A stretch of 63,974 bases of DNA, filler included, from Octopus bimaculoides (Eukaryota), in NCBI RefSeq assembly GCF_001194135.2. It is 7 parts of 6 records of this genome, joined end to end, with 100 filler letters (N's around TTAATTAATTAA, not from the genome) between each part and the next. Parts side by side here need not be neighbours in the genome. Positions count along the whole stretch, not along the records: positions 5,396 to 36,216 come from NC_068981.1; 6 more parts are not named here. One strand, 5' to 3'. The translations under genes were made by a program, and so were the position numbers. The notes below the pieces were generated by a model that had not been told where the DNA came from, ran no database searches, and saw only the letters and a program-made list of their open reading frames with translations. Below, in pieces: positions 11,592 to 36,216 of the stretch (the stretch's first letter is position 1; the number at the start of each line of letters is the position of its first letter).

Positions 11592-11592
<1 letters not shown>

Positions 11593-11665
<73 letters not shown>
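11593..11665. repeat. (AGT)n microsatellite (tail of the 11666-11895 repeat)
   Basis: Direct reading. Confidence 0.95.
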
Positions 11666-12012: not shown

Positions 12013-13429
12013 TGGTACAGTTCAGCAAATATTGTTTGGACATATGAACATTCTGTTTTATTATCCTATATATCAGAAAGTGGCATTGTTCGGTATTGAG
12101 AGGGTGCTGAAAATCAAAGATACTCAAACCAAACATTTTCTTTGGTGCTATTTGTATTTAACTGCAACACCATCAAACACGAATCCAGCGATTAAACAAT
12201 CCAGCTGTAAAATTTGCTTCTTTACTTCTTTACCATTATATTTCTATGTATATACTATTCAATGATATATATGGTGAATTTTTGATGAAATGTGGCTACC
12301 ATATCTTGCAAATAATATGTTGTCTACGCTCTGTATTCACGCAAAAAGATGTTCATCTCGATAGTTGATCTCTCGTTGTCTCCTCTTACTTGTAATGGTA
12401 TGAATGCAGACGCACAACTCATTTTCCTCACCTCACCGTAAATTTTGCAGTAACTACTTGAGCCAATATAAATCATATTTGGTTATAATGTTTACGCAAT
12501 AACATAAGCAAGTCTTTTGTTGGATAGCACAGCTGAGTTCAATACTATCTGTTGTAGCATCACTTATGATAATAATGTCTTCCTATTCATCTTTTAAAGT
12601 TGTGAACATCAATATGGACTAGATGTCCTCTTCAAACCTTTCGTGAATATCCGATCATATGGGATTGGTGTACCATTGTTACTATTATTCCCACAAAATT
12701 TCCCCTTTTTAAGCTTCTCACAATATAGACAGATACAGGTCAGTGAACAAATAGATGTGCTAGGAACTTTAAGCCGAACTTCCTAATTTTCCCTTTATAT
12801 GAATGTTCCCAGAACACCTTAGTGCAGCGAAGGTTAAATAGAGAGGCGACATTCATTAATAAATATCAACCACAACATAACATGAACACCACACTTAATA
12901 CAGGGCACTACTACCTTTAACAATACCAATTATCCCCCTAACACTCACACATCCCATAAACCATTCATACTGTATTAATCAAATTACACTAATTACATCA
13001 CTACTTATCTCCCTTGCACGTAATCTTTTTCCTCAAGTGCTATTAGACTGTTTAGAAATCGGTGTTGAGTCAAAGTCACTGAACAGCCATGACTAGACCG
13101 GTACGACTTGCTATATTGACTCATAATAATGAGTTCTATACATCTTAATTCTGCCTCAAATCATTTATTTGTATGTATAGATCTGCTTTTATTTAAAAAA
13201 AGCCACTACTTTGATACTTTATTTGTTTCTTTTCAGTTTGCCCCATTTATACCGCGTGTAGCTTTTTTTCTCTGAAACCTGTTTCTATTATATGTGTGTA
13301 TATATATATATATGTACATACCTACATATATATGTATATATAATACATATATGGGTACAGGACATCAAAAAAAGAAAAAACATGGACAGAATAAGAAACG
13401 AGAGCATAAAAAACAAAAACAAACGAACT

Positions 13430-13820
13430 TTTTTCGAACAATGAAAAAAAATCAAACAGAGAAACGAGAGATGCATCATAAAGAACATTCCTTTCATCAG
13501 TTGTCCCCTGTTTTATCTACTCCGAGTTTCGAAGGTAAGGACAAGACGCGTCTTCGTTAAAGCAGTCCTTCCTGCAAAGCAAATTAAATAAAATTTGGGA
13601 TTATTTGCGGACGGTGAAAGTGGTAACAAAAGCAGGACTGATAACAAAATAGTAAAAACAAACGGTGAGGGCTATTAAATGAAGACGATGTGAAGTGCTG
13701 AACGCTGGAAAAACGGGCTTTGAGAAGAGACAGATAAAAGTACGTTTTGTCATTAGGAAGGAGGTGGCAGAAAGAGAGAATGGCCGTTAGTCACGTGTGA
13801 TCAACAAGATGTACAAAATA
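13430..13820 (-). mobile_element. Repeat family carrying a rearranged hammerhead motif (probable PLE-derived segment), copy 1
   Basis: About 400 bp of colinear similarity to 52800-53175 (ttcatcag, tttcgaag, caaattaaat, gtgaagtg..tgaacgctg, aagtacgt, cacgtg). The PLE assignment is inferred from the known HHR-PLE association. Confidence 0.65.
13486..13552 (-). ncRNA. Candidate non-circularly permuted hammerhead ribozyme, copy 1
   Basis: Minus strand: GACGCGUC-UUGUCC-UUA-CCUUC-GAAACUCG-(16 nt)-GGACAA-CUGAUGA-AAGG. Contains CUGAUGA, GAAA and GUC, plus stem I (6 bp), stem II (4 bp) and stem III (4 of 5 bp). Confidence 0.6.
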
Positions 13821-14019
13821 TGGGGGTTTCGTTCACAAGGATGTAAACGATTAGGTACGCTAGGTAAATGTTGTAACGGATTACTAGGGCTCCAAGGTTA
13901 TAGTTATGGAGCAATTGCAAATTTCCGATATAGCGGATATATAATTTTTAAAGCGAGCAACAAACGTTAAGGTAAGGCAAACATATCAAATCATATACAT
14001 CATTTTTATTGGAAAAAAC

Positions 14020-14960
14020 TCCAAGACTTACTGCTGTTCCTGGGATATCCCGGAATATGAGATATTTTGTCATCGGTGACAAATAGAGAAAATGAGAAGG
14101 GTATAGATTAATGAAATGACAACATATAACAGGTTCTCTCATGGTAAACATGGTAAACATAACAACCTCCATATAAGAGGTTTCTCGTGGTAAACAACAT
14201 AGCATCTTATGTTCCATCTCAACATTCACTTTAATAACTATTACTTCATAAAATATTTAACATACAATTTGTAGAATTTTCACATTACACTGCAACGTAT
14301 TTTGTCTTGTTTCTTTCGGTAAATTAATATTTGGTAACTTCAAGTATGTCCTTCTCTGATTTTGGTTGTCTACAAATACGAGGATTTATAATTTTCAGTT
14401 TATAACTGAAACCGAGATATATGTTCAGCATTCAAGTAGTGAGCTAAATTAATTGATAAATTAACGCGGTCCCGAATCATTAAAACATCTGGAATGCAAT
14501 ATAAGTAAAATAATAAAGCTGTATTGAGGAATAAAACAACATTGCCCACAGAATGAGAAGGGTATAGATTAATGAAGTAATGATATAGAGGACAGGAGTA
14601 AAGGAGTAAGGAGATGAATATAAAAGTGCGGAAAAATTTGTGCTTAGACGTTGTGAAGGCATCGTTGTGTTTATTAAATAATTGTGATGGGTTACGTGTT
14701 AAAATTCTGAGACAGTCTTTTACGATACTGCAAATCGAGTGCTGGCAATGATATGAGATGCTAGAGTGTATTATAGACTAGGAAAGTCCAGATTGTATTT
14801 TTCTATTATTTTTTCTTCTCTTCCTTCATCTCCTTATTGGTTTACTGCTGTTCTCTATATCATCACTTCAATAATCTAAACCCTTCTCATTTTCCCTATT
14901 TTAACTGTTAACGGAATTTTCCATACTCTGGGATATCTCAGAAACAATAGTAAGAACTTT
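14020..14960. repeat. Inverted repeat pair (about 145-bp arms), each with an HHR relic at its outer end; PLE inverted pLTR-like
   Basis: The reverse complement of 14815-14960 aligns with 14020-14115 joined to 14577-14630; the left arm is split by an insertion. Confidence 0.8.
14116..14551 (+). repeat. 436-bp insertion flanked by a 25-bp direct repeat; homologous to 15990-16393
   Basis: aatgagaagggtatagattaatgaa occurs at 14091-14115 and 14552-14576. The body aligns with 15990-16393 with scattered substitutions. Confidence 0.9.
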
Positions 14961-15989
14961 TTGTTTCGAAAGATAATATTGTATACGACTTGAGATGTTT
15001 GTCTTGCCTTAACGTCTGTGGTCCTCTTTAACAATTATATATATAGATCACCGTGTTTGTACTGTTCTTTGCGAGCCACATGCCGTTTCTGAAGCTAATA
15101 TATGCGGCTCCAAAACAAAATATCAAATGTAAGTGCTACTTGTGAAACATTATTTTTAGGAATTTCATTGATGGCAACTTAGGAATATATTCTACGCACA
15201 TTTCTCTTTCACGTTGCTTCTACATATGCACAAATATCGCGCGCGCATGCACATATATACAAACGCATATGTACAAACACTTACACAGAAACCCACTTAC
15301 ACACACACATGCTTCAATTTCATGTATGTTTTAACTTCCATTAACTGTACAACACTAAAATTGTTCCATTTGAGAAGCTTAATACAGCACTTTGAAAGTT
15401 GTTGAAAAATTCAACACCATAAATGATATTGGTATAAAAATAACACCATGGACGCAAGGAAAATATTAGTGCTTTATAAACACGTTGGAGAGATAACGAT
15501 TTATATAAATAGTGATCTTGGAAAAAATAGGTTTTCATTCGGCTGCACTGGATGTTAGTAACGTTCGAAATGCTAATCATTCTGCATCATCGTCATACCA
15601 TGCTACTCAAAGGCTGAAAAGTTATTTAGCATTAGATAAATTGAACTCTTATTTGCTTTCTCACACTTTTCGTTTGTTTATGAGTTTTTCATGTGATTGA
15701 TATATATTAAATATAACATAGACTGTTTTACCGTTTCATGAATCTTCGAATTTAGACATTATTAAATATATATGCAATTACCCGCTAACCTACTAGCTTG
15801 TTACGATGCAAGTATCTGTAAAGCCATTGAGTTTCTTTATGTCGCTTCCGAGGGAATTCGACTGCTGTTTCTTGCTGGACGTCTGTCATTAACAATCACT
15901 AGAAATGTCGAACTCAAGGAACCTGGCAGTTCTCAAGGTTGCAGCGGATGCTTTCCAGTCATCAGCGATATAAATGCAATTAATTATAG

Positions 15990-16393
15990 GCATCACAAGT
16001 CCATATCAGAGGTTGTCTCATGGTAAATAACATAGTATCTTATGTTCCAATGCAACATTCACTTTAGTAACTATTACTTAATAAAATATTTAACATACTA
16101 ATTGTAGATTTTTTTGCATTACACTGCAACGTGTTTTGTCTTGTTTCTTTCGGTAAATTAATATTTGGTGCCTTCAAGTATTTCGTTCTCGGATTTTGAA
16201 TGTCTACAAATAGGAGGATTTATAATTTTCAGTTTGTAACTGAAACCGAGATATGCGTTCTGTATTCAAGTAGTAAGCTAAATTAAATGTTCAATTAACG
16301 CAGTCCCGAATCATTAAAACATCTGGAATGCAATATAAGTAAAATAATAAAGTTGTATTGAGGAATAAAACAACATTGCCGACAGAATGAGAA
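15990..16393 (+). repeat. Direct-repeat partner of 14160-14559
   Basis: Long shared runs, e.g. gtcccgaatcattaaaacatctggaatgcaatataagtaaaataataaag. Confidence 0.95.
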
Positions 16394-17030
16394 TTAAACT
16401 TGATGTTCTATTTGCCCAAGCATTTCTTCGTTCAATGCTATGTCCCACATATATGAAGTTTTAGTCGTCATACATGAATACTTCCTTATTGTACATATAT
16501 GTCTGAAATTATTGAATAGGGACAATATTGAGGTTAAGTTTAGTTCTACTTGATGCATGAAGAACATTTGGTATAGAAAATAGGATAATGCATGTAAACA
16601 TTACGGATCTGCAAATAACATCAAACTTTTAATTAAATCGGTATGACAGAAGATACATATCAGAAAAGCTACAGCAATCTTACTTCATTATTCAGAAATA
16701 AAGTGAAAAGTAATTGTTGTACGTCTCTGCAGGTATATAAATGTAATTTCAATGTTAATGACATTGATATCTTCAGATTGCATGAGGAAAGTAGGGAACT
16801 CAATACATGAATTACAAACAAATAATCATTCGAATGTTAACAGAAGTTAAAACAAATGCCAAAGAATTTACGAAGTACAAACATTGATTTTCATTAAGTG
16901 TAACTCTTTAATAACCTGTCATCCAAGATCTATTTTCTGATATTTACATAAATTTAATCAAATATAGATCTATATATTATATATCTTATTGGTAAATTAT
17001 CAAAGCATATATTATATGAAAAGTTAAGTG

Positions 17031-17160
17031 ACTGAGCGATGAGAATATCAGATAGAAAGGACTACTCCATTTGTCCGACTCACCTCAATTGTAGTTCAAA
17101 TCACACTGAATTCCATGTCGTTTCAATCTTATCGGGGTCCATAAAATAGTAGTAGTTTAA
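17031..17160 (+). mobile_element. SINE family B, old decayed copy
   Basis: gtagttcaaatcacactga..tttcaatcttatcggggtccataaaatag resembles the family B B-box and central block. Confidence 0.5.
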
Positions 17161-20100
17161 TTAGAACATTCTTAGAACATGAGGCAGAATGTCTTAAGGC
17201 ATCTCTTCCATAATTTTACGTTCTGTTACCAAACATTACCAAAACCTGGATGGAAAAATTACCGGATCTTCTCTTGCCTTCATTTGAAGAGTATCGGCTA
17301 AGTAGAGAGGAGAAACTTGCATGCATCTGCAACAGGTGGTCCTTCAAACAAAAATGTCATCCTGGATTAGACATAAACCACAGGTACATGCAAGTACAGA
17401 CTGAGCAAACAGTTACATATACGTATCCGGCAGAAATATCTAATCTTAAGTAACATGTGCAAAAATAATGATAATTTTTTTGTCATTAAAATAATAACGT
17501 TAAATCTAACGATGTTGTGCATATGGCTTAATTAGAAAATTGCATGGAAATTCAATATTTTTACAGCCTGTTTTCAGATTTAACAATTGATATTTATAAT
17601 ATTACCTCCTAACGACCACCGAACTAATGAAGCTAATTTCTTTAAAGTGCATAGAATTGTTATGAAAAATGCGCGTCTTTTGTTTGCGCTAAATACGTTG
17701 CTCTACAATTACTGGTATAGTAAATTAATATTTTATTCTCGTCATCCGTGCAACTTTCGATGCGTGGTTACACAATAACATTATTATGAAATAACAGGAC
17801 CATCAAAAATTATCAATAATGGAGGAACAGTGCTTTCGTTAGCGATGTTTAGTCCTTATATAAATATTAAAGTGCCAAATTACAAAGAATGTATTTGCCG
17901 TAACTAAATATATCATATGATATCATTAATAATATTCTTATTTTAGAAAATATGCAAGCATCTTAATACTAACAACGTAGTTATGCATGATCCATGGAAT
18001 GTCACTTGGCAAATATTGAACTAGTGAAATGTTGGTTATATTATTGTATGTTTTCCTCAAATGCTTAGCATATTTTGCATGGAGACATGTTAGACATTAT
18101 CTACAATTATCTGGAGTAAACATAAAAGGAAAGTTTGCATCTAATCCAAATGTCGTTACTTCGATTAGCAATCGAAAGCAAGAGACACACATGCTCATAT
18201 ATATATATAACCCACATACTCGATATCTAGTCAAAATGAACGATATATTCCGCTTATATACACACGCTCATTAGTTTACAATTATTGCAAATAATCAGAT
18301 TATATCGGGTAATATCTACAAAAGATCATGCTTAAGTATTATGTCAGCAAAACTCGAGAAGTAACTAGTAAGAAGTCTATCCAACTACAATACGTATCAT
18401 GTACACAATTCTTCTTTGGTCATATTCTTAAGCTGCAATTAGGATTTGTATTCTACACCCTTTGATCGTATCAAACTAAAAGAAAGAGAAATATCATTGT
18501 TTTCCATTCACGTGTAGACTGGTTGTACATTAACCTTAACTTAGAAATGCGACAATTTATTTCTCGCTTTTGTTTTCTCTTTCAACGTTGATTTAATCAG
18601 AGCATATTTGCGCAAGCATTTGGTTTTAGAAGTGCTGTTTTCGCTTTTTACATTCTTTCAGGTAAGAATCGAATATTATTTCCTATACAACTCACACATT
18701 ATTAAAAGCAATAAACTGTAAAACACACGATACCAAATTACTACCAGCGTAAAAGTTTGGTGAATAAGCTAAAAGAGAAACAATATTCTATGAACTCCTT
18801 TAACAGACTGTTTGATGTGTAATGAGTACGATTATTATGTTATTACATCTCACAATGCGATTACGTGATTTCATAGGAGCTGTCTTCGACAAGAAGAGAA
18901 GTAGTCAATCATAACTTACGAAAAGAGTAGAAATTTGTCGATATGTATGCTTACAAGCACACGTAGACATACACGTTATATACTCAAATAGATGTCTAAA
19001 TATATATGTTTGTGTGTGTGTGTGTGTGTATGTATGTACATATATATACATGTGTGTATATATATATANNNNNNNNNNNNNNNNNNNNNNNNNNNNNNNN
19101 NNNNNNNNNNNNNNNNNNNNNNNNNNNNNNNNNNNNNNNNNNNNNNNNNNNNNNNNNNNNNNNNNNNNNNNNNNNNNNNNNNNNNNNNNNNNNNNNNNNN
19201 NNNNNNNNNNNNNNNNNNNNNNNNNNNNNNNNNNNNNNNNNNNNNNNNNNNNNNNNNNNNNNNNNNNNNNNNNNNNNNNNNNNNNNNNNNNNNNNNNNNN
19301 NNNNNNNNNNNNNNNNNNNNNNNNNNNNNNNNNNNNNNNNNNNNNNNNNNNNNNNNNNNNNNNNNNNNNNNNNNNNNNNNNNNNNNNNNNNNNNNNNNNN
19401 NNNNNNNNNNNNNNNNNNNNNNNNNNNNNNNNNNNNNNNNNNNNNNNNNNNNNNNNNNNNNNNNNNNNNNNNNNNNNNNNNNNNNNNNNNNNNNNNNNNN
19501 NNNNNNNNNNNNNNNNNNNNNNNNNNNNNNNNNNNNNNNNNNNNNNNNNNNNNNNNNNNNNNNNNNNNNNNNNNNNNNNNNNNNNNNNNNNNNNNNNNNN
19601 NNNNNNNNNNNNNNNNNNNNNNNNNNNNNNNNNNNNNNNNNNNNNNNNNNNNNNNNNNNNNNNNNNNNNNNNNNNNNNNNNNNNNNNNNNNNNNNNNNNN
19701 NNNNNNNNNNNNNNNNNNNNNNNNNNNNNNNNNNNNNNNNNNNNNNNNNNNNNNNNNNNNNNNNNNNNNNNNNNNNNNNNNNNNNNNNNNNNNNNNNNNN
19801 ATATATATGTATGTGTGTGTGTATGCGTGTGCCTATATTTATACCATTCATTTAGTCGTGCGTAGATGTGCGGTCAAACACTACTAAAATCAATATTCAA
19901 AACAAAATATTTTCACGCGTGTACTCGGGCTAGATTATTTCTAAGTACATCTTAATGCATGATCTTTATAGTTCCCTGTTATTCACATACATAGCAACTA
20001 TGGTTGCAATGTATGTGAATAACAATCCAAATTGAGGGAACCGAGCAGGTAAAATCCAGTCTAAGTATGTTTCCTGACAATCAGAACCTCAGAAGTAATA

Positions 20101-23317: not shown

Positions 23318-25344
23318 GTAATGTCTCCTAAGATTTACTTACAGTGTGTTCATCTATAAGATGCTTCAATAATTTATATTTTTCTAAATTGTCATTCACC
23401 AAATGCCAGACGTTTACGGCACAAAAGAAAAACACTTTCCTGGATGATACTTATCTGCTAATTATAAAAGTAAGTATACTTGAACATTAATTTTGTATCT
23501 TCTCTAGTATCCATTCTGTGATGTATATGATTTGTATAAAAGAAATCCATTCGACTTTCACGTTTATTGTTGCTACACAATGTGAATTAATATTTGTATA
23601 TCTAGATATAATTTTGCAAACATTTGCATTCGTTAGTAACATCCCGCTAAAATTCCATCAGTATTTACGCTTATACAAAATCCTTCTTTCATGGTTCTTG
23701 TTTTCATGTTTCTAAAATTTCGATCTGAAGCACTGTGTCAAGTTTATTATAACTTTATCACCTAGCAAAATGTTGTATTGATACTGTGTCAAACATTGCG
23801 GGCGAAAATGTTTCAATGCGAAATACATAAAATATTCAATAAACAAGAAATGACGACGAGGGTCAAATTTTAACACAAATGGTTAGTGAAGATGGCGATT
23901 TAGGAGTGCTATTATTGCTATGTAGATGTATGAAAAGAGAACTAGAGAAGTATGTTTCCATTTGTAACTGTAATTGTTCTGTTTTTGCTATCTAATCTCG
24001 TTACTGAAAACTGAAGCAGAATAATGAGTCAAATTTAGTTACATTTTATAATATGTTTCATATTCTTTCACTGATTCTACATCTCATTATTTTCATTCTG
24101 TTTTATCTTTATGAAATATAAATATCAGAGTCCATAAATGTTATCTCTTAGCTNNNNNNNNNNNNNNNNNNNNNNNNNNNNNNNNNNNNNNNNNNNNNNN
24201 NNNNNNNNNNNNNNNNNNNNNNNNNNNNNNNNNNNNNNNNNNNNNNNNNNNNNNNNNNNNNNNNNNNNNNNNNNNNNNNNNNNNNNNNNNNNNNNNNNNN
24301 NNNNNNNNNNNNNNNNNNNNNNNNNNNNNNNNNNNNNNNNNNNNNNNNNNNNNNNNNNNNNNNNNNNNNNNNNNNNNNNNNNNNNNNNNNNNNTATATAT
24401 ATATGAGTATGTGGATGTGTGTGGGCTTTTATTTGTATACTACTTTTTTGTGTATTTGTGTGTATGTATGCACGTATTTTTGTATGTATTTGGCCATTAG
24501 TTTTATGAATCTCACTACAGTGTATAATTCGTATTTGGAACTTTTGCTTATGATATAGGCTATATACACCTTATTTTATTCATATATCAATTTAATGATA
24601 GCAACTTCACTTCTGCCCCCTTTCCACTTATTTGGAGATTTGATGTGAGGAAAGGAGGCGGTGGCAACTTGAAACAACAGAGAATATATAAATAGTTATG
24701 AGTTACAGTTGTTATTTCTACAGTTTAATTCGTGTGATAAAATTCAACATGCCATTATTTCCATTAATATAAAGCGTGAGTTGAGCATTAAAGTAACATT
24801 GCAGAAACACAGATACAATGATTTTGCCATATTTATCTTTTTGGTGTATCATTTTATTTCGATTCTTTAACACGTAATATATTTGAGGGTTTTAATGTAA
24901 ATATTTGCAATAGCATTCAAATAAGATTCAGCATGTTATTCTTAATTGAAATAGTACTTTTGTTTTGACATTTGTAAAATTATCCGTTACTTCAACTTAA
25001 TTTCTGAATATAGGGACTCATGTACTTTTATCGAAATTGTTTTGTCAACTAGTAATAATATTCTATTTCAGATTTCTTAAGGTATTTCGTCATTTTGGTT
25101 TTTGAAAAATACTCTTGTTGAAAGTTACTTCTACCACTGTATCTTTATAGGAATTTCTACATCTTATTTGAGAAACACAATGTATTTTCTTTAATTTATA
25201 ACAAATCTTCGAACAGCGTAACGGTCGTATGTTCGCTTAAACTTGTCCATTTAGTCTGATAGAATACAATTTCAAGTTAGCCCTACCAAATATGTTTGAA
25301 ATATAGGATGCAATGTCACATTATGTACCTAATAAAACCACAAA

Positions 25345-26205
25345 ATGAAAAATGGAATACGCATTGCTACTGATATTAATAAGTATAGGTCTAATTCTAG
25401 AGATACTAAATATGTGGTTGTTATGAATAATAAGTTGCGGGAGAAAATAGATGGGATTAAGAAACGAACACTAAAAAAAGAGACTGAGAGCACTATACTT
25501 GAAGCGCAAGACCAAGCTTCGGCCACAAACTGGAGTGTCAACCTTAGGAATGAGCAAGTGTCTCCGCTGTGCCGCATCTGTAACAGAATGGATGACCCAT
25601 TGCCCTTAGCATGCCCAAGACTACTACAAGTTGTGGCAAGAAGGTCATGTAGCGAAAGAGTTCCATTGCAAAATGTGTGGAAATTGGGGGCCAGAGGGGC
25701 ATACGTGGTATGAACACAAACTGCAGATAATAATGGAGTGCGAGACTGGCAAAATCGTCTGGGATTTCCCAATCCAAGCAGATCAGGTCGGAACATCGGA
25801 CCTAGTGGTGGTCGACACGATACACCACATATGCTATATGGTTGAAGCTGCATGCCAATTTGACCTTCGAATAGTCAAGAAGGAAGTCTAAAAATCAAAT
25901 ATATATAACATTCCTAAGTATGAATTATCCGGGCTATCGAAAAAAAAGTGAGTGAAAATAGTGCTAATTATTGTTTGGTCCTTCGGTCAGTATCAGAATG
26001 CATCAAAAAGAATATAAAAGAAATTCGAATAGAGTGCCCAGTAGAGCTGTTTACAAAAACTTTTGCCTCCATCGCACGACCATAATAATCAGGTAAGTAT
26101 TCGATAGATGAAAGGAAGTAATAGCATGGTACAGTAGGCTGCAGGTAGCAAGCCCGCTACGCATGCAAGACTCCAGGAGTTACAACAAAACTTGTGATAA
26201 AAAGA
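25345..26205 (+). mobile_element. RLE non-LTR retrotransposon relic (R4/Dong-like), CCHC finger plus endonuclease region
   Basis: LKKETESTILEAQDQA, CRICN (zinc knuckle), WYEHKLQIIMECETGKIVWDFPIQAD..SDLVVVD..ACQFDLRIVKKE, spread across frameshifts. Followed by an AAT-rich tract at about 26207-26250. Confidence 0.8.
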
Positions 26206-29200
26206 AATATTAATGATAATAACGACAATAAATTTAGGAATAATAATTGCGTTAGGAAGAACATCCAATCTTAATAACGTAATACTATCAAAAATATGTA
26301 GACAAATAATAAAAAGAATGGATAAAAGATTTTATGTGATATTATGCACCATTATCATTTTCAATAGCTTCGAATATCTCACGTAAATTCTTTGCTGCAC
26401 AAGGTAGGTGTTTCCCACCTTGAAGTAAATATTGGAAATTATATAATCGACATAGCGTAAAGTTTTGTATTCAGCCACTGGAAATTTAGTTGAAATCATA
26501 ACCGCACACAATAAACAGAGAATTAGGGAATATCTAAATTCTAAATCTTTAAACAAAAGTGGGACAGATAATGTGTATTACTCTTTTTGAACAAGTTTTT
26601 GATTCTATAAATAATCACGATTCTGATAATACAATTAGGTTATCCTCTAATCTGAATATTAATTGTAATAATAATCTCACCTTAAGAGCTAATTTCCTCA
26701 GGAGTACTAGAGGAAATACTTTTAACTATGACTACCGAATCTAAGTGAATAAATGCCAGTATAATTGTAAAAACAAAATTTTATATCCTTTCGAAAATCA
26801 GTTCTTAAAGAAAAAAATATATTATTGTAAGGCAATTGCTGGAGGTCGTATGTATTCGTTCATCTTCTAAAATTTTGAAATCTAGGTTTCGTAATCATTC
26901 TCATTTATTTATGTTTAGGAAAAAGTGTTTCTACAAATGCATTTAGAGTTTAAAGGATAATAACATTAAGTATGATTTAAAGTGATCCATCATTGGTTAT
27001 GCACCATCGCACAATATTGATAATTCTAAATGTGATATTTGCCTTGAAGAAATCCATTATATAATTACTTCTAAGTTAATATCATTGAATTTTCATGGTA
27101 ATTTTAAAATAAGTTTTCACCATACATTTAGAAAGTCATTAAGGGTAATTCTTAAAAATATGTTTGATATGATGATTAAATAGGCAACTAATTGTTATGA
27201 CGTACACTATGAAAGTTTCTATTAATAATGACGTCAAGCAATTATTAATTTTTTTTTTAGTTATCCAAGACTTCATCAGTAGACTTCATCCTCTTTTAGA
27301 TTATAATTCTGTATCCACTGACGCCGCCGATAGTTGCGTACTAAAATGACTTTTCTTAAATTTGTTTAATTTCATTTTCATAAAACCTTTTCGACATCCA
27401 ATGACGTCACGATTTCTTGAATGAAGGAACGTCTTAGGTTGAATTCTTTTTAGCGTTTATTTTTTTTATTTTTTGGTTTGTTAGCGTTTATCAAATGATA
27501 AAATTTCAGATGTTTGATANNNNNNNNNNNNNNNNNNNNNNNNNNNNNNNNNNNNNNNNNNNNNNNNNNNNNNNNNNNNNNNNNNNNNNNNNNNNNNNNN
27601 NNNNNNNNNNNNNNNNNNNNNNNNNNNNNNNNNNNNNNNNNNNNNNNNNNNNNNNNNNNNNNNNNNNNNNNNNNNNNNNNNNNNNNNNNNNNNNNNNNNN
27701 NNNNNNNNNNNNNNNNNNNNNNNNNNNNNNNNNNNNNNNNNNNNNNNNNNNNNNNNNNNNNNNNNNNNNNNNNNNNNNNNNNNNNNNNNNNNNNNNNNNN
27801 NNNNNNNNNNNNNNNNNNNNNNNNNNNNNNNNNNNNNNNNNNNNNNNNNNNNNNNNNNNNNNNNNNNNNNNNNNNNNNNNNNNNNNNNNNNNNNNNNNNN
27901 NNNNNNNNNNNNNNNNNNNNNNNNNNNNNNNNNNNNNNNNNNNNNNNNNNNNNNNNNNNNNNNNNNNNNNNNNNNNNNNNNNNNNNNNNNNNNNNNNNNN
28001 NNNNNNNNNNNNNNNNNNNNNNNNNNNNNNNNNNNNNNNNNNNNNNNNNNNNNNNNNNNNNNNNNNNNNNNNNNNNNNNNNNTATATATATATATATATA
28101 TATGCATCAGTATACATATAGGTATATATGTCTGTGTATTCTTTTATTCTTTTACTTTTTGCATTTATTTCACTGTGGCAATACTGGAGAACCACCGTAA
28201 GACATTTTGTGTGCAATGCAATAGAAACAATAGTCGTACGTATAAGGTGAGATCTGTAATAAAACTATAACTCTCTCTATGCGTATGTTGTGATATATAT
28301 ATGTGTGTGTGTGTGTGCTTGTGTGTGTGCGTATGCAGGTGTGTGTGTGTTTTGTGTTCGTAAATTTACATTCATATACGTATGGATATATGCAGGCATA
28401 TATAGAACTTGCTTCCCCGTGATCACTTCCAAACTTAATCCATTTTTGCTTCATTATTATAAATTTTGACGTGATTTTAGACATTAAGCTCCAGTCGAAA
28501 TGGCGCCATTTCAGAGCGATTAACTACATTAAATTATCCTTTATACAATGAAAGCAAAGTGATAATTTAAAGGCAATACCAAACGTTACACATTTATGCG
28601 CACTTTTTTCCTTATATCTTTGTACTAAACTGTCTTGAAGAAGGTTACGGAACGCATAGTATTTTCATTCACCCTTTTGTCGAATTAAACAAAATCGAAG
28701 AAAATATATTACTTCGTAATAATTACATCTGTGGTTTTCCCCTTCGTTTCTATTACATCTTCGAAAGATCTTTCCTTCGACGAATTTTCTATTTTAGTAT
28801 CTCGAAATGTTGCTGAGCACATTTGAATGTGATCAAAATTTGAATCAGCAAACGATTGAAGGAATAGTAAAAAAAAAAATAAATAAATTAAAAAAAAAAA
28901 CTGAATTGAAAGATGAACGGAAAAGTCGGCTGCGCAGCAGTTTTCAGTTCTCAATGTCTGCTTATAGAAAGCTCTAATGAAACTGTGTCAACAATGGTAT
29001 TGATTTATCATATACTTTCGCATTATTATATCGAAAACTATCCCAAAGAATTGCGAAGCAATTTTTAAACTCATCACCTTAAAATATATATGAAAGGTAC
29101 TTAGAAGTGATTTGAGCATATGTGTACGAGGTCTTGATGCAATATTGTTTTCTTCTTTATCGCGTTAAAATGTTCGACTCTTTGATAGACATTGTAATAT

Positions 29201-29751: not shown

Positions 29752-29952
29752 TGTTGCAGGAAATTAGAAATAATGATACATCCATCACCCGTAACGAGTG
29801 ATTAACCTAATCACAATAAGTAAAGAGAAGTTCATGAAGTACCAGAGTACGTAGTAGGTTACCAGAGATTGTCATGTCTTTAGCAGTTTTACTAAATATA
29901 CTGTATATCGAAGCGGGCATTATAACAATCCAACATTTTAATCATTATAACA
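29752..29952 (+). repeat. 5' LTR of the Gypsy element
   Basis: Starts TGTTGCAGG and ends ..TTATAACA. Followed by PBS-like attgtgacgatga. Aligns by eye to 32478-32640. The exact 3' boundary is uncertain. Confidence 0.7.
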
Positions 29953-30219
29953 ATTGTGACGATGATTTTAACAACTGATGAGGAGTTAACAAACTCACAA
30001 AACTTTTGTTGTGTGAATTGTACGAAAAAGAAATTGTAAAAATATGGGAAATTTGTTGGTCGGTCTGCTCGAGTTGCAAAAACAGGAACAATAACAAAGG
30101 AAATTACTACAACGGCAAGAACAAGAATTGAAGCAACAACACTAACAAGAACTGATAGAACAACAACAGTAGCAGATGCATCAGGAAGAACAACAACCCG
30201 AAGCAACAGCAAAATAGAA

Positions 30220-31050
30220 ATGATATTACAGCAACAAATGTTGCAATTACTGAAATCGTCAGGAAAATCAGAAGAAGTGTTCCTGAAAGATTATGTCGTG
30301 AACTCCATAACAGAGTTCAAATACGAACCTGACTTAAATTGGAAGCAATATACAGAAGATTATGAGCAAATCTTCGAGAAAGAATTTAAAGATTGGGACA
30401 AGAAATTGAAAACGCGCTTAATCGTGAGAAAACTGCCTGCAACAGAACATGAATGATACAACAATTATGTGCTCCCAAGAAAAGCTTCATAAACATTAAT
30501 GACACAATAGATATATTGTGTAAAATTTTCAGTGGAAAAAGTTCATTGTTCAACAGAGTTTGGAAGTGTTTGAATATAGAGCAACAAAAAAAAAAAAGAC
30601 TAAGGCTACATTACATATGCTGGCAGAGTTAACAGGGAATGCGAGAAGTTCAAGCTGAACGAATTAACGCCTTATACGTTCAAATGCCTGATTTTTACAC
30701 AGTGGATAACTACCGAAAAGGAGGCATAAGTTAGAACTAGAATTCTCGCAAAAGCTGGAGAAAACCAGGATGTAACCCTCTACAAAGTATCAGAAGAATG
30801 TGAAAAGATAGTCAAATTAACACACGACACAGAGCAAATCCAACGGAAAGATTCTTTTTCCAAGTACATGTGCGGAAAAGTCAGAATAAAGATTTTTTTT
30901 TTCTTTCTAAAAACACGACAAACACGACAAACACGACATGGAAATAAACCCTTCCTTTGTATGTGGAGATATACACATGGAGAAAAATTGTTCATCTAAG
31001 AAAGTGGAGTGATTTTGTTGCAGAAATATAGGAGCTGTAAATAAGCACTG
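30220..31050 (+). pseudogene. Gypsy gag remnant with zinc knuckle
   Basis: ORF 30220-30456 (..VVNSITEFKYEPD..FEKEFKDWDKKLKTRLIVRKL). Broken frames continue: YAGRVNRECEKFKLNEL..FKCLIF, then VCGDIHMEKNCSSKKVE*FCC..HC. Several stops and frameshifts. Confidence 0.75.
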
Positions 31051-33860: not shown

Positions 33861-36132
33861 GTGTATGTTCGTATGAAAGTATATGTGTGTGTATATATGT
33901 GTAAGGAAAGAGAGAGGGAAAGAGAAATATTTATGTGTATCTATGTTCACCTGTCCTCTGTGAATTTGTGTGTACATCGTTTTTTATTCGTGTTTATCAG
34001 CAGTGAAATACAATATCACACGCAACGGTCAAGTTGGTAAAGTATGTCTATTGCTTTATATTGATATCAACATATCAAACATTGTTCAAGAATAACACTA
34101 CATTAATATAACTTAAAATAGGTTCATGGCAACATAAATAATTGGCAAACTTAATTATGTGTCTTTAGAACGATGTTGCCAACCAATTTGAAATGTAGTA
34201 TATATATACAAAATCTACGATGTAATTGTAATAGCTTTGAAAGTCCCTTGACAATAACACCAAGTGATAGTTTACAAGACAAATCTCAACTGTCATAGCT
34301 TTGTGCTACTCTAAAAGAAAATATTCCACCTCTCTCGAATTAAATTACTATCTGCCGTTCATTCTTTAGTAAAATTCAGACCAAATTTATTTTCCATTAA
34401 GATTAGATGGAGCAAAGTAGAACGCAATAGCAAAGAACACACTATGAACTAAGAACATTTATCTTTCGCCAAAGTGGATTATCATAATAGAAATTCTTAA
34501 CTTGGTATTCTCTTACTTACAGGATAATAGCTGTTAATAGCTTTTCAAAATAGGCAATATTGGTCTATTCAATAATACAGTAATTCTGTTAGCTGCAATA
34601 ATAATCTACATTCGCCATCAGTGAACGCCTCAACGAGCTGTTGTAATCAGCATAAGTACATTATTACTGGTGTTCTGTAGATGAACGATTATTATAACAC
34701 TTGATTGAATTCGCTTCTGTGTAGACGACTTTCAAACGAAAAACAAAGGGAATCTTTACATATATATATATATATATATANNNNNNNNNNNNNNNNNNNN
34801 NNNNNNNNNNNNNNNNNNNNNNNNNNNNNNNNNNNNNNNNNNNNNNNNNNNNNNNNNNNNNNNNNNNNNNNNNNNNNNNNNNNNNNNNNNNNNNNNNNNN
34901 NNNNNNNNNNNNNNNNNNNNNNNNNNNNNNNNNNNNNNNNNNNNNNNNNNNNNNNNNNNNNNNNNNNNNNNNNNNNNNNNNNNNNNNNNNNNNNNNNNNN
35001 NNNNNNNNNNNNNNNNNNNNNNNNNNNNNNNNNNNNNNNNNNNNNNNNNNNNNNNNNNNNNNNNNNNNNNNNNNNNNNNNNNNNNNNNNNNNNNNNNNNN
35101 NNNNNNNNNNNNNNNNNNNNNNNNNNNNNNNNNNNNNNNNNNNNNNNNNNNNNNNNNNNNNNNNNNNNNNNNNNNNNNNNNNNNNNNNNNNNNNNNNNNN
35201 NNNNNNNNNNNNNNNNNNNNNNNNNNNNNNNNNNNNNNNNNNNNNNNNNNNNNNNNATATATATATATATTTATATATATATATATATATATGCCTGCAT
35301 GGTACGTAACTATACTATATGTATCTTCGCACTCGCAATGAGTTTCGAATATTGTGCAAATTCTGTTATATTGATATTGTTACTACCGCTGAAGTATCCG
35401 CGCATGATATACATTCACATATGACCTCTCAAATATTGCGCCTTCAAATTTTGAAAGAATTGGATTTACAGCATCATACTCAAGGAAAGAGATTCTATAT
35501 ACCGGAGATCATTTTTCTCATGTTATTTCAGTAACCGAAATGTCTGGTTCAATGGATGACTCAGTACCACAAGGACATTGAAGTATTTTAAGACACTCAT
35601 CAGAGTGAATGCAAAACTCATTACTGCCTAAGTTATAGTGTGGGTTTTGGCTGCTGAGTGCGTTAGCCAATTTCGCCGACCTCTTAACTGCAATATATGA
35701 TTGACTACAACAAACTCATGTACTGAAATTACCAGCACTGAGATATCCGCACTCGCTGCACAACACACACATAATAGGTTTAATTAATTCACCGCAATTA
35801 GTTTCATTTACTACTAAACGCAGAATTGTCTATCAACCATACTTATGTTCCTATAGTTTATTCACTGTCAGTAACATTGTTGATAAATATATATATATAT
35901 ATATATATATACAACTACCGACAGTTTTATTGATGGCGGAATATAGAGTAGCAAAGGCATGTAAAAACATTTGGTTAAATGTCAGCAATCGAGTAAATAT
36001 ACGTATACTTACTGAATGAAAGCACACGAAGAATGTGATACGAATAAAACGGCTTGGTTTTAAAATGTACTCCACATAACGTACACACACATGTACAGAG
36101 ATAAATTTATATATAAACTGTATATATATATA

Positions 36133-36163
<31 letters not shown>

Positions 36164-36177
36164 CTATATGTATATAA

Positions 36178-36216
<39 letters not shown>

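What the first reader, a model, noticed from the sequence alone, without database searches (positions are those of the whole stretch)
13486..13552. Candidate hammerhead ribozyme with a non-circular permutation (pseudoknotted strand order), copy 1
Seen: the minus strand reads GACGCGUC | UUGUCC | UUA | CCUUC GAAA CUCG | 16 nt | GGACAA CUGAUGA AAGG. Stem I (UUGUCC/GGACAA) is a perfect 6 bp placed exactly between the GUC triplet and CUGAUGA. Stem II is AAGG/CCUU, with one extra C before GAAA. Stem III is ACUCG/CGCGU with one mismatch. Established: in type I, II and III hammerheads the strands follow the circular order CUGAUGA, GAAA, NUH. Here the order is NUH, GAAA, CUGAUGA, which no circular permutation can give. 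Inference: stem I joins stem II by a 3-nt linker, and their distal ends are neighbours in the active fold; stem III joins stem I by a long linker. That is the asymmetry the 3D fold would require. Predicted cleavage lies between 13545 and 13544. This genomic copy is probably partly decayed. I recall rearranged hammerheads being reported from computational screens, so novelty needs a literature check.
Basis: partly seen in the sequence, partly recalled or inferred. Interest (0 to 1): 0.9.

Follow-up and report, generated by a model that had tools for sequence, protein, structure and literature searches.

The report
Lone imperfect look-alike of rearranged hammerhead
The sequence really does carry the three hammerhead-ribozyme blocks in a rearranged order, but that order was already published in 2023 as the "type-SGC" hammerhead. 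This single, imperfect and thermodynamically weak copy is most likely a chance look-alike, not a working or once-working ribozyme.

Summary
The minus strand 13552-13490 reads GACGCGUC|UUGUCC|UUA|CCUUC GAAA CUCG|16 nt|GGACAA CUGAUGA AAGG, in the order cleavage site, GAAA, CUGAUGA.

This order is not new. It is the "type-SGC" hammerhead of Eckert et al., NAR 2023 (583 examples, cleavage shown). Those also join stem I to stem II by about 3 nt.

As a ribozyme the locus does poorly:
- **Core junction:** stem II needs either an inserted C next to G12 or an A10.1.C11.1 mispair. All 23 validated SGC sequences I parsed have G10.1-C11.1 flush with GAAA.
- **Weak stems:** stems II and III are worth -1.7 and 0.0 kcal/mol, against -6.9+-1.3 and -2.9+-1.1 in the validated set.
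- **Competing fold:** the predicted fold buries GAAA, GUC and GAUG in other helices, and overall stability is no better than shuffles (z = -0.12).
- **No database match:** Rfam finds nothing, and a model built from validated SGC sequences does not find it.
- **No second copy:** none exists in the 30.8-kb piece or in any reachable collection, so covariation is untestable.

Chance gives about 0.02-0.03 equally good SGC matches per Mb. That is about 1e-3 for this piece but tens per gigabase.

Verdict: most likely a chance or degenerate motif. About 15% chance of a real or decayed genomic type-SGC hammerhead.

The parts
13545..13552 (-). Block S, 5' part: GACGCGUC. This is the stem III 3' strand (CGCGU, 16.5-16.1) plus C17 at 13545. 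Predicted cleavage is 3' of 13545. The octamer is itself a palindrome.
   Evidence: sequence; pair list
13539..13544 (-). Stem I 3' strand, UUGUCC (positions 1.1-1.6).
   Evidence: perfect 6-bp Watson-Crick pairing with 13501-13506; duplex -6.4 kcal/mol, or -8.7 for the 8-nt strands that add two G.U pairs
13536..13538 (-). 3-nt linker UUA between stem I and stem II. The two U can instead extend stem I as G.U pairs.
   Evidence: same length, and in many HRIMA-1 sequences the same letters, as the validated type-SGC linker
13531..13535 (-). Stem II 3' strand CCUU (13535-13532) plus the extra C (13531) lying between stem II and G12.
   Evidence: a 4-bp stem of -1.7 kcal/mol. If C13531 is taken as 11.1 instead, it faces A10.1 (mispair).
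13527..13530 (-). GAAA (G12 A13 A14 A15.1).
13523..13526 (-). Stem III 5' strand CUCG (15.2-15.5). U15.3 faces C16.3 (mismatch).
   Evidence: duplex energy 0.0 kcal/mol
13507..13522 (-). 16-nt linker GAGUAGAUAAAACAGG between stem III and stem I. It would have to supply the 5' strand of the stem I/II-joining helix seen in type-SGC ribozymes.
   Evidence: only an A/U-rich pairing with UGUUCUUUAU is possible, -0.8 to -1.8 kcal/mol
13501..13506 (-). Stem I 5' strand, GGACAA (2.6-2.1).
13494..13500 (-). CUGAUGA (C3-A9).
13490..13493 (-). Stem II 5' strand, AAGG. Position 10.1 is A, not the usual G.
13520..13534 (-). Competing local hairpin CUUCGA-AAC-UCGGAG. It sequesters G12/A13, the stem II 3' strand and the stem III 5' strand.
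   Evidence: -4.8 kcal/mol on its own; present in both the minimum-energy and centroid structures; G12 pairing probability 0.99

Best explanation
This is a chance, or at most degenerate and non-functional, match to the hammerhead pattern in the block order S-G-C. It lies in a single-copy, AT-rich, non-coding stretch of a eukaryote-like draft genome.

The only strong element is the 6-bp complement UUGUCC/GGACAA, placed next to GUC on one side and CUGAUGA on the other. The GAAA between them, with its two flanking 4-nt complements, is weak enough to be coincidental.

An RNA of this sequence is predicted to fold into an extended stem I that also pairs CGUC with GAUG, enclosing a hairpin that buries GAAA. 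It would therefore not be expected to self-cleave efficiently.

- **Shown:** the sequence, the chance rates, the energies, and the failures to match models or find copies.
- **Inferred:** lack of catalytic activity and lack of function.
For: 1. **Chance rate.** Matches at least this good occur at 0.018-0.032 per Mb for SGC and 0.14 per Mb for any of the six orders. That is tens to hundreds per gigabase-scale genome.
2. **Empirical check of the chance rate.** A 23-base gapped pattern taken from the candidate gave 7 unrelated hits in 596 Gb of prokaryote genomes. About 4 were expected by my own arithmetic assuming equal base frequencies.
3. **Core junction defect.** Either a C is inserted between stem II and G12, or A10.1.C11.1 is mispaired. 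All 23 validated type-SGC sequences I parsed have G10.1-C11.1. One parse placed a base before G12; I read that parse as an artefact of my script. Perreault et al. reject hits with a mispair next to the core or with bulges in short stems.
4. **Helix strength.** Stem II is -1.7 and stem III 0.0 kcal/mol. Validated SGC sequences give -6.9+-1.3 (weakest -3.8) and -2.9+-1.1 (weakest -1.0).
5. **Folding.** The minimum free energy of the 96-nt RNA is -17.7 kcal/mol, z = -0.12 against shuffles. In the 67-nt RNA, G12 is paired with probability 0.99, and G5-G8 of CUGAUGA with 0.96-0.98, in non-hammerhead helices.
6. **No database match.** No Rfam family reaches its gathering score anywhere in the piece, and there is no hammerhead hit at E<=10 around the locus. 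A covariance model from 22 validated SGC sequences, run with filters off, does not list the locus at E<=10.
7. **No second copy.** None in the piece by pattern search, blastn or nhmmer. None in the viral, metagenome or prokaryote collections. Nothing via translated-ORF searches.
8. **Published caution.** The literature says explicitly that sequences fitting the hammerhead consensus arise by chance in large databases.
Against: - For one 30-kb piece the match is improbable (about 1e-3; about 7e-5 to 2e-4 if compactness and the short linker are also required).
- The geometry closely resembles validated type-SGC ribozymes such as SGC-3. By the paper's helices as I read them from the oligo sequences, SGC-3 has stem I 6 bp, a 3-nt linker, stem II 4 bp and stem III 5 bp.
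- The core letters CUGAUGA, GAAA, A15.1-U16.1 and C17 are all intact.
- No eukaryotic genome could be searched, so absence of homologues is not shown for the source genome.
- Nearest-neighbour energies do not model pseudoknots or tertiary contacts.
Confidence: 0.7

Rival explanations
1. This is a genuine DNA-encoded type-SGC hammerhead. It is either a weakly active ribozyme or a mutated copy from a dispersed repeat family whose consensus is active. It would act like other genomic hammerheads in processing repeat-derived transcripts.
For: - The block order, the 3-nt linker and the stem lengths fit the validated class.
- All strictly conserved core letters are present.
- The match is about 1e-3 improbable within one piece.
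- Canonical hammerheads are common in animal genomes, including 235 Rfam Hammerhead_1 hits in the giant squid.
Against: - Eckert et al. searched RefSeq and found no such RNA in genomes of known organisms, apart from one type-GCS candidate in a bacterium.
- There is a core-junction defect, very weak stems II and III, and no convincing stem I/II-joining helix. That helix was required for SGC-3 activity.
- A dominant competing fold is predicted.
- The segment is single-copy in 30.8 kb, whereas animal hammerheads typically sit in tandem or abundant repeats.
- There is no similarity to the HRIMA-1 family.
Confidence: 0.15
2. This is the debris of ordinary metazoan type-I (minimal or dimeric, Penelope-like-element or retrozyme type) hammerhead units. 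The 3' half of one unit (C GAA[G] ACGCGU C / UUGUCCUU) and the 5' half of a neighbouring unit (GGACAA CUGAUGA) were brought together by deletions. In that case the S-G-C order is an accident of decay.
For: - Upstream of the cleavage site the RNA reads CGAAGACGCGUC. One inserted G apart, that is the C-GAA-A-CGCG-U-C arrangement with a short palindromic helix III described for metazoan type-I hammerheads.
- AAGGAC at 13583-13578 can pair with GUCCUU (13542-13537), as a type-I stem I would.
- Helix I of 6 bp and helix II of 4 bp are the typical metazoan dimensions.
- The locus lies about 135 nt from a (TA)n tract, and some Penelope-like elements prefer such targets.
Against: - No Hammerhead_1 or other hammerhead hit even at E<=10.
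- No CUGAUGA or helix II hairpin lies between AAGGAC and CGAAG.
- There is no tandem periodicity and no second unit.
- I saw no long open frame, and so no recognisable reverse-transcriptase or endonuclease remnant, in my own reading of the six-frame translation of 13553-18500.
- The GAA before the palindrome has a few-percent chance expectation on its own (my estimate).
Confidence: 0.1
3. The motif acts in trans or as a dimer. The palindrome GACGCGUC would pair two transcripts and build a hammerhead from blocks supplied by different molecules.
For: - GACGCGUC is self-complementary.
- Dimeric activity through a palindromic helix III is established for metazoan hammerheads.
Against: - A dimer through the full 8-nt palindrome would pair C17, which must stay unpaired (inference from the hammerhead core).
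- Dimerising does not cure the stem II defect.
- There is no second copy nearby to supply a partner.
Confidence: 0.03

Closest known systems
[quoted passage not shown]
   Same: - Identical block order: cleavage-site block, GAAA block, CUGAnGA block.
- All three stems cross each other.
- A linker of about 3 nt (often UUA) joins stem I to stem II, and a longer variable linker joins stem III to stem I.
- Stem lengths are like SGC-3.
   Different: - The validated members come from metatranscriptomes and metagenomes and were not found in genomes of known organisms.
- All parsed members have G10.1-C11.1 next to GAAA, usually with one extra U after A9. They have a GC-rich 4-6-bp stem II and a 5-bp stem III.
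[quoted passage not shown]
- They show covariation.
- The candidate lacks or fails each of these, and a model built from them does not detect it.
Metazoan type-I hammerheads of Penelope-like elements, non-LTR retrozymes and satellites (Cervera & de la Pena 2014, PMC4209133)
   Same: - Animal-genome setting.
- Helix I of 6 bp and helix II of 4 bp.
- A palindromic ACGCGU at the helix III position.
- Such motifs have low or dimer-dependent activity.
   Different: - The order there is C-G-S with hairpin-capped helices II and III.
[quoted passage not shown]
- They occur in large families with covariation, usually in tandem or in flanking repeats.
- None of this is seen here.
Chance 'hammerhead-like' motifs in large sequence databases (discussed in Perreault et al. 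2011, PMC3088659)
   Same: - A simple motif that fits the consensus letters.
[quoted passage not shown] Hits of that kind were rejected there.
   Different: Those were screened for types I-III. This one is in the SGC order, for which I estimated the chance rate myself.

Membership tests
Hammerhead ribozyme (any type) | Conserved core C3 U4 G5 A6 N7 G8 A9 | tested here: met
   CUGAUGA at 13500-13494, minus strand
Hammerhead ribozyme (any type) | G12 A13 A14, the A15.1-U16.1 pair, and H17 at the cleavage site | tested here: met
   GAAA at 13530-13527; A13527 can pair with U13546; C17 = 13545
Hammerhead ribozyme (any type) | [quoted passage not shown] 2011) | tested here: not met
   Either C13531 is inserted between 11.1 and G12, or A10.1.C11.1 is a mispair. 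In addition there is a U.C mismatch in the 5-bp stem III.
Hammerhead ribozyme (any type) | G10.1-C11.1 closing pair of stem II (quasi-invariant) | tested here: not met
   Position 10.1 is A. All 23 validated SGC sequences parsed have G-C. It is also listed as highly conserved in metazoan minimal hammerheads.
Hammerhead ribozyme (any type) | Site-specific, Mg2+-dependent self-cleavage, abolished by a G5 mutation | not testable with these tools
   Needs in vitro transcription and mapping of the cleavage site.
Type-SGC hammerhead (Eckert et al. 2023) | 5'-to-3' block order S (cleavage site), G (GAAA), C (CUGAnGA) | tested here: met
   Order 13552 > 13530 > 13500 on the minus strand. My descriptor returns it as the only SGC hit in the piece.
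Type-SGC hammerhead (Eckert et al. 2023) | Short linker (typically 3 nt) joining stem I directly to stem II | tested here: met
   UUA, 13538-13536, compared with the text and alignment of the paper.
Type-SGC hammerhead (Eckert et al. 2023) | A helix joining the other sides of stems I and II (needed for SGC-3 activity) | tested here: inconclusive
   Only A/U-rich pairings are possible: AACA/UGUU and AUAA/UUAU separated by a 2-nt bulge. Best duplex is -0.8 to -1.8 kcal/mol. My crude windows give a wide range for natural examples (mean -4.4, sd 3.5).
Type-SGC hammerhead (Eckert et al. 2023) | Stable stems II and III | tested here: not met
   -1.7 and 0.0 kcal/mol, against -6.9+-1.3 and -2.9+-1.1 in the validated set; weaker than the weakest validated example for both stems.
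Type-SGC hammerhead (Eckert et al. 2023) | Covariation supporting stems I-III among homologues | not testable with these tools
   No homologue could be retrieved, whether by DNA pattern scans, by protein or ORF searches over the locus or within the piece. No eukaryotic genome collection is searchable here.
HRIMA-1 motif (sequence family) | Detectable similarity to the family model, including the invariant stem I AUGUU/AACAU | tested here: not met
   Model R1, built from 21 HRIMA-1 sequences plus SGC-3, gives 22 background hits at E<=10 with filters off. None is at 13486-13552. Stem I here is UUGUCC/GGACAA.
Rfam hammerhead families (types I, II, III, HH9, HH10) | Match to a curated covariance model | tested here: not met
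   No match at gathering score in the piece. No hammerhead family at E<=10 in 13200-13900. This is expected for a non-circular permutation, but it also rules out a canonical hammerhead overlapping the site.
Metazoan genomic hammerheads (Penelope-like-element, retrozyme or satellite type) | Occurrence in tandem or dispersed repeat families | tested here: not met
   Within the 30.8-kb piece the segment 13353-13937 is single-copy and non-tandem. The genome-wide copy number could not be tested.

The most novel reading that the evidence does not exclude
The locus is a mutated member of a so-far undescribed repeat family in an animal (possibly cephalopod) genome whose consensus encodes an active type-SGC hammerhead. 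That would be the first DNA-encoded, eukaryote-genomic example of a non-circularly permuted ribozyme. It would show that this topology arose or spread outside the RNA replicons where it was discovered.
Probability: 0.12. Interest if true: 0.7.

Novelty: not a real feature. Interest (0 to 1): 0.2.

Why it matters
If the locus were a real ribozyme, it would move non-circularly permuted hammerheads from uncultured RNA replicons into an animal genome. It would also tie them to retroelement or repeat biology, and give a handle on how such permutations evolve (for example by rearrangement of tandem type-I units).

As it stands, the value of the finding is mainly cautionary:
- The permuted descriptor is loose enough that matches with intact core letters and one good stem are expected tens of times per gigabase.
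- The 'new topology' is already in the literature.

Tried and rejected
1. **A second copy in the piece.** Pattern search with 3 mismatches, blastn at word sizes 9 and 7, and nhmmer all found none. The seven other CUGAUGA sites have no hammerhead context.

2. **Copies elsewhere.**
   - The 17-mer GGACAACTGATGAAAGG in viral contigs gave 16 hits. Fourteen are copies of one conserved phage segment that looks like coding sequence, and two are unrelated. None has S or G blocks upstream.
   - A gapped 26-base pattern and a 23-mer across the S-G blocks gave nothing in metagenome contigs.
   - A gapped 23-base pattern in prokaryote genomes gave 7 chance hits with no UH before the stem I strand and no full motif.

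3. **Reaching other genomic copies through spurious ORFs.**
   - Word-indexed protein searches found nothing for the ORF over the motif or for the neighbouring repeat ORF.
   - Exact-product look-ups of three ORFs over or next to the motif and one LINE-region ORF found nothing.

4. **Identifying the organism.**
   - The word-indexed protein search with the LINE-like fragment found nothing.
   - The same LINE-like fragment has 101 HMMER hits, but those looked up are unnamed Logan, ENA or JGI proteins.
   - 'Cephalopod' could therefore be neither confirmed nor refuted.

5. **Penelope-like or Naiad element context** (suggested by the adjacent (TA)n tract).
   - I saw no long open frames in the six-frame translation of 13553-18500.
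Pfam on the ORFs found nothing relevant.

6. **tRNA-derived SINE head.** No tRNA was found.

7. **Other identities for the locus.** Rfam at E<=10 gives only (TA)n-driven miRNA look-alikes at 13277-13366 and a snoZ5 hit at E=7.4. I took these as noise.

Full report
**What is there.**
GACGCGUC | UUGUCC | UUA | CCUUC GAAA CUCG | GAGUAGAUAAAACAGG | GGACAA CUGAUGA AAGG.
- C17 is base 13545, so a hammerhead would cut between 13545 and 13544.
- Stem I (UUGUCC/GGACAA) is a perfect 6 bp flush against GUC and CUGAUGA. It can grow to 8 bp with two G.U pairs.
- Stem II is AAGG/CCUU with a C left over before GAAA.
- Stem III is ACUCG/CGCGU with a U.C mismatch.
- The order is cleavage site, then GAAA, then CUGAUGA. 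All three helices cross one another.

**Setting.**
- The piece is AT-rich (about 32% G+C) and full of (TA)n, (CA)n and (GTA)n tracts and N gaps.
- It has no tRNA genes and no Rfam family at gathering score.
- It has only decayed retroelement fragments. It looks like a draft animal genome, but I could not name the organism.
- The motif lies between a (TA)n tract (13289-13352) and an interspersed repeat. That ~400-bp repeat is at 14123-14587 and 16002-16393 and does not include the motif.
- The segment 13353-13937 has no other copy in the piece by pattern search, blastn or nhmmer. It is not tandem.

**Is the topology new?**
No. Eckert, Friedrich, Weinberg and Weinberg (NAR 2023, PMC10085705) divided the hammerhead into blocks S, G and C. 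They described natural 'type-SGC' hammerheads, exactly this order.
- They report 583 predicted sequences, with R-scape-supported covariation.
- They note that stem I is joined to stem II by 'typically three nucleotides'. In their alignment this stretch is very often UUA, as here.
- They also state that no such RNAs were found in genomes of known organisms, apart from one type-GCS candidate in a bacterium.
- I found no later paper reporting a genomic type-SGC hammerhead.

**Does this locus qualify?**
The strictly conserved letters are all present. The problems are beside them.
In the alternative register C11.1 faces A10.1.
- *Comparison with validated sequences.* I parsed 23 validated SGC sequences from the paper's supplement with my descriptor. 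All have G10.1-C11.1, and all carry one extra base after A9. One parse placed a base before G12; I read that as an artefact of my script.
- *Curation rules.* Perreault et al. (2011) rejected hits with a mispair directly next to the core or with bulges or mispairs in short stems. Cervera and de la Pena list G10.1-C11.1 among the features that separate real metazoan hammerheads from random hits.
- *Energies.* Stem I is strong (-8.7 kcal/mol). Stem II is -1.7 and stem III 0.0, against -6.9+-1.3 and -2.9+-1.1 in the validated set. Both are weaker than the weakest validated example.
- *Fourth helix.* It could only be an A/U-rich, bulged pairing of about -1 to -2 kcal/mol.
- *Folding.* The 96-nt RNA is no more stable than its shuffles (z = -0.12).
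- *Competing structure.* The favoured nested structure of the 67-nt RNA (-14.0 kcal/mol) extends stem I by pairing CGUC with GAUG. It encloses the hairpin CUUCGA-AAC-UCGGAG (-4.8 kcal/mol). G12 is then paired with probability 0.99, and G5-G8 with 0.96-0.98.
- *Control.* For two validated SGC sequences the same calculation keeps native helices: stem III and the joining helix.
- *Models.* A covariance model built from 22 validated SGC sequences, run without filters over the whole piece, returns 22 background hits at E<=10. The locus is not among them. Rfam gives no hammerhead hit at E<=10 either.

**Chance.**
I used a first-order Markov model of the piece and conditioned on CUGAnGA.
- SGC matches at least as good as this one have stem I >= 6 Watson-Crick pairs, stem III >= 4 of 5, stem II >= 4 with at most one inserted base, and span <= 160 nt. 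They occur at 0.018-0.032 per Mb of DNA.
- Requiring span <= 80 gives 0.007 per Mb. Requiring a linker <= 5 nt gives 0.0026 per Mb.
- All six block orders together give 0.14 per Mb.
For a gigabase-scale genome it means tens to hundreds of such accidents.
- As a sanity check, a 23-base gapped pattern taken from the candidate found 7 unrelated places in 596 Gb of prokaryote genomes. About 4 were expected by my arithmetic assuming equal base frequencies.
- The literature makes the same point about hammerhead consensus matches.

**Conservation.**
This would be the decisive evidence, and I could not obtain it.
- No eukaryotic genome collection is searchable with these tools.
- Scans of viral, metagenome and prokaryote contigs found nothing related.
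- Attempts to reach other copies through spurious ORFs failed.
Within the piece they are not borne out.

**Alternatives considered.**
- *Debris of ordinary type-I units.* The bases just upstream read CGAAGACGCGUC. One inserted G apart, this is the GAAA plus short palindromic helix III plus C17 of metazoan type-I hammerheads. AAGGAC further upstream can pair with GUCCUU. The S-G-C order could then be debris of neighbouring ordinary units. Against this, no CUGAUGA or helix II lies in the right place, there is no periodicity, and there is no model hit.
- *Penelope-like element context.* The nearby (TA)n tract prompted this idea. It found no support from my reading of the translated frames; no profile search of those frames could be run.

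**Verdict.**
The topological interpretation is correct but already published. The claim that this locus is, or was, a ribozyme is not supported by any test I could run and is contradicted by several.
- Chance or degenerate look-alike: about 0.7.
- Real or decayed genomic type-SGC hammerhead: about 0.15.
- Debris of type-I units: about 0.1.

A genome-wide copy search with covariation analysis, and a simple in vitro cleavage assay, would settle it.

Noticed in passing
window 14123-14587 and 16002-16393; partial inverted copies at 14825-14901; 13937-14119 matches 14863-15042 in inverted orientation: An interspersed repeat of about 400-460 bp is present in two direct copies (89-92% identical), with inverted fragments between them. 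It does not contain the hammerhead-like motif.
   Followed up: partly
window 25336-25888 (+): Two overlapping open frames, offset by a frameshift, resemble the C-terminal part of a non-LTR retrotransposon protein (CxxC...H...C-like stretch, then ...IVWDFPIQAD...). The 93-aa fragment has 101 HMMER hits (best 1.8e-19). All ten that I looked up are unnamed or 'hypothetical' proteins from Logan, ENA or JGI. There is no Pfam hit.
   Followed up: partly
window 30040-30453 (+): A 138-aa open frame has a weak, sub-threshold Pfam hit to DUF7083 (E=2.7e-4, 21.4 bits against a cut-off of 27). It may be a decayed retroelement gag-like region.
   Followed up: no
window 13289-13352, and flanks of the N gaps (e.g. 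19003-19068, 28083-28131, 35257-35324, 36107-36216): (TA)n/(TG)n microsatellites are frequent and sit at several assembly-gap edges. The one at 13289-13352 produces spurious sub-threshold Rfam miRNA hits (mir-466, mir-297, mir-568).
   Followed up: yes
window 11592-11665: A perfect (GTA) x 24.7 trinucleotide repeat.
   Followed up: no
window 13545-13565 (-): CGAAGACGCGUC contains the palindrome GACGCGUC. One inserted G apart, it resembles the GAAA + palindromic helix III + C17 half of metazoan type-I hammerheads. It is treated as a rival explanation and is not resolvable here.
   Followed up: partly
window 29924-29995 (+): The best CUGAUGA-containing hit of my type-SGC model (11.3 bits, E=0.2) surrounds the CUGAUGA at 29975, but it has no GAAA block. 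I judged it chance.
   Followed up: yes
L020 6178-6226 (-) and L021 723-771 (+): A Desulfobacteraceae MAG and a SAR324 MAG share a nearly identical ~70-nt stretch (TTGTCCAC.CA.GAAAAATGATTGT...GGGGGACAACTGATGACCGGATG). It was picked up by my gapped pattern. It is not preceded by UH and is not a hammerhead; it is probably a conserved gene segment.
   Followed up: no
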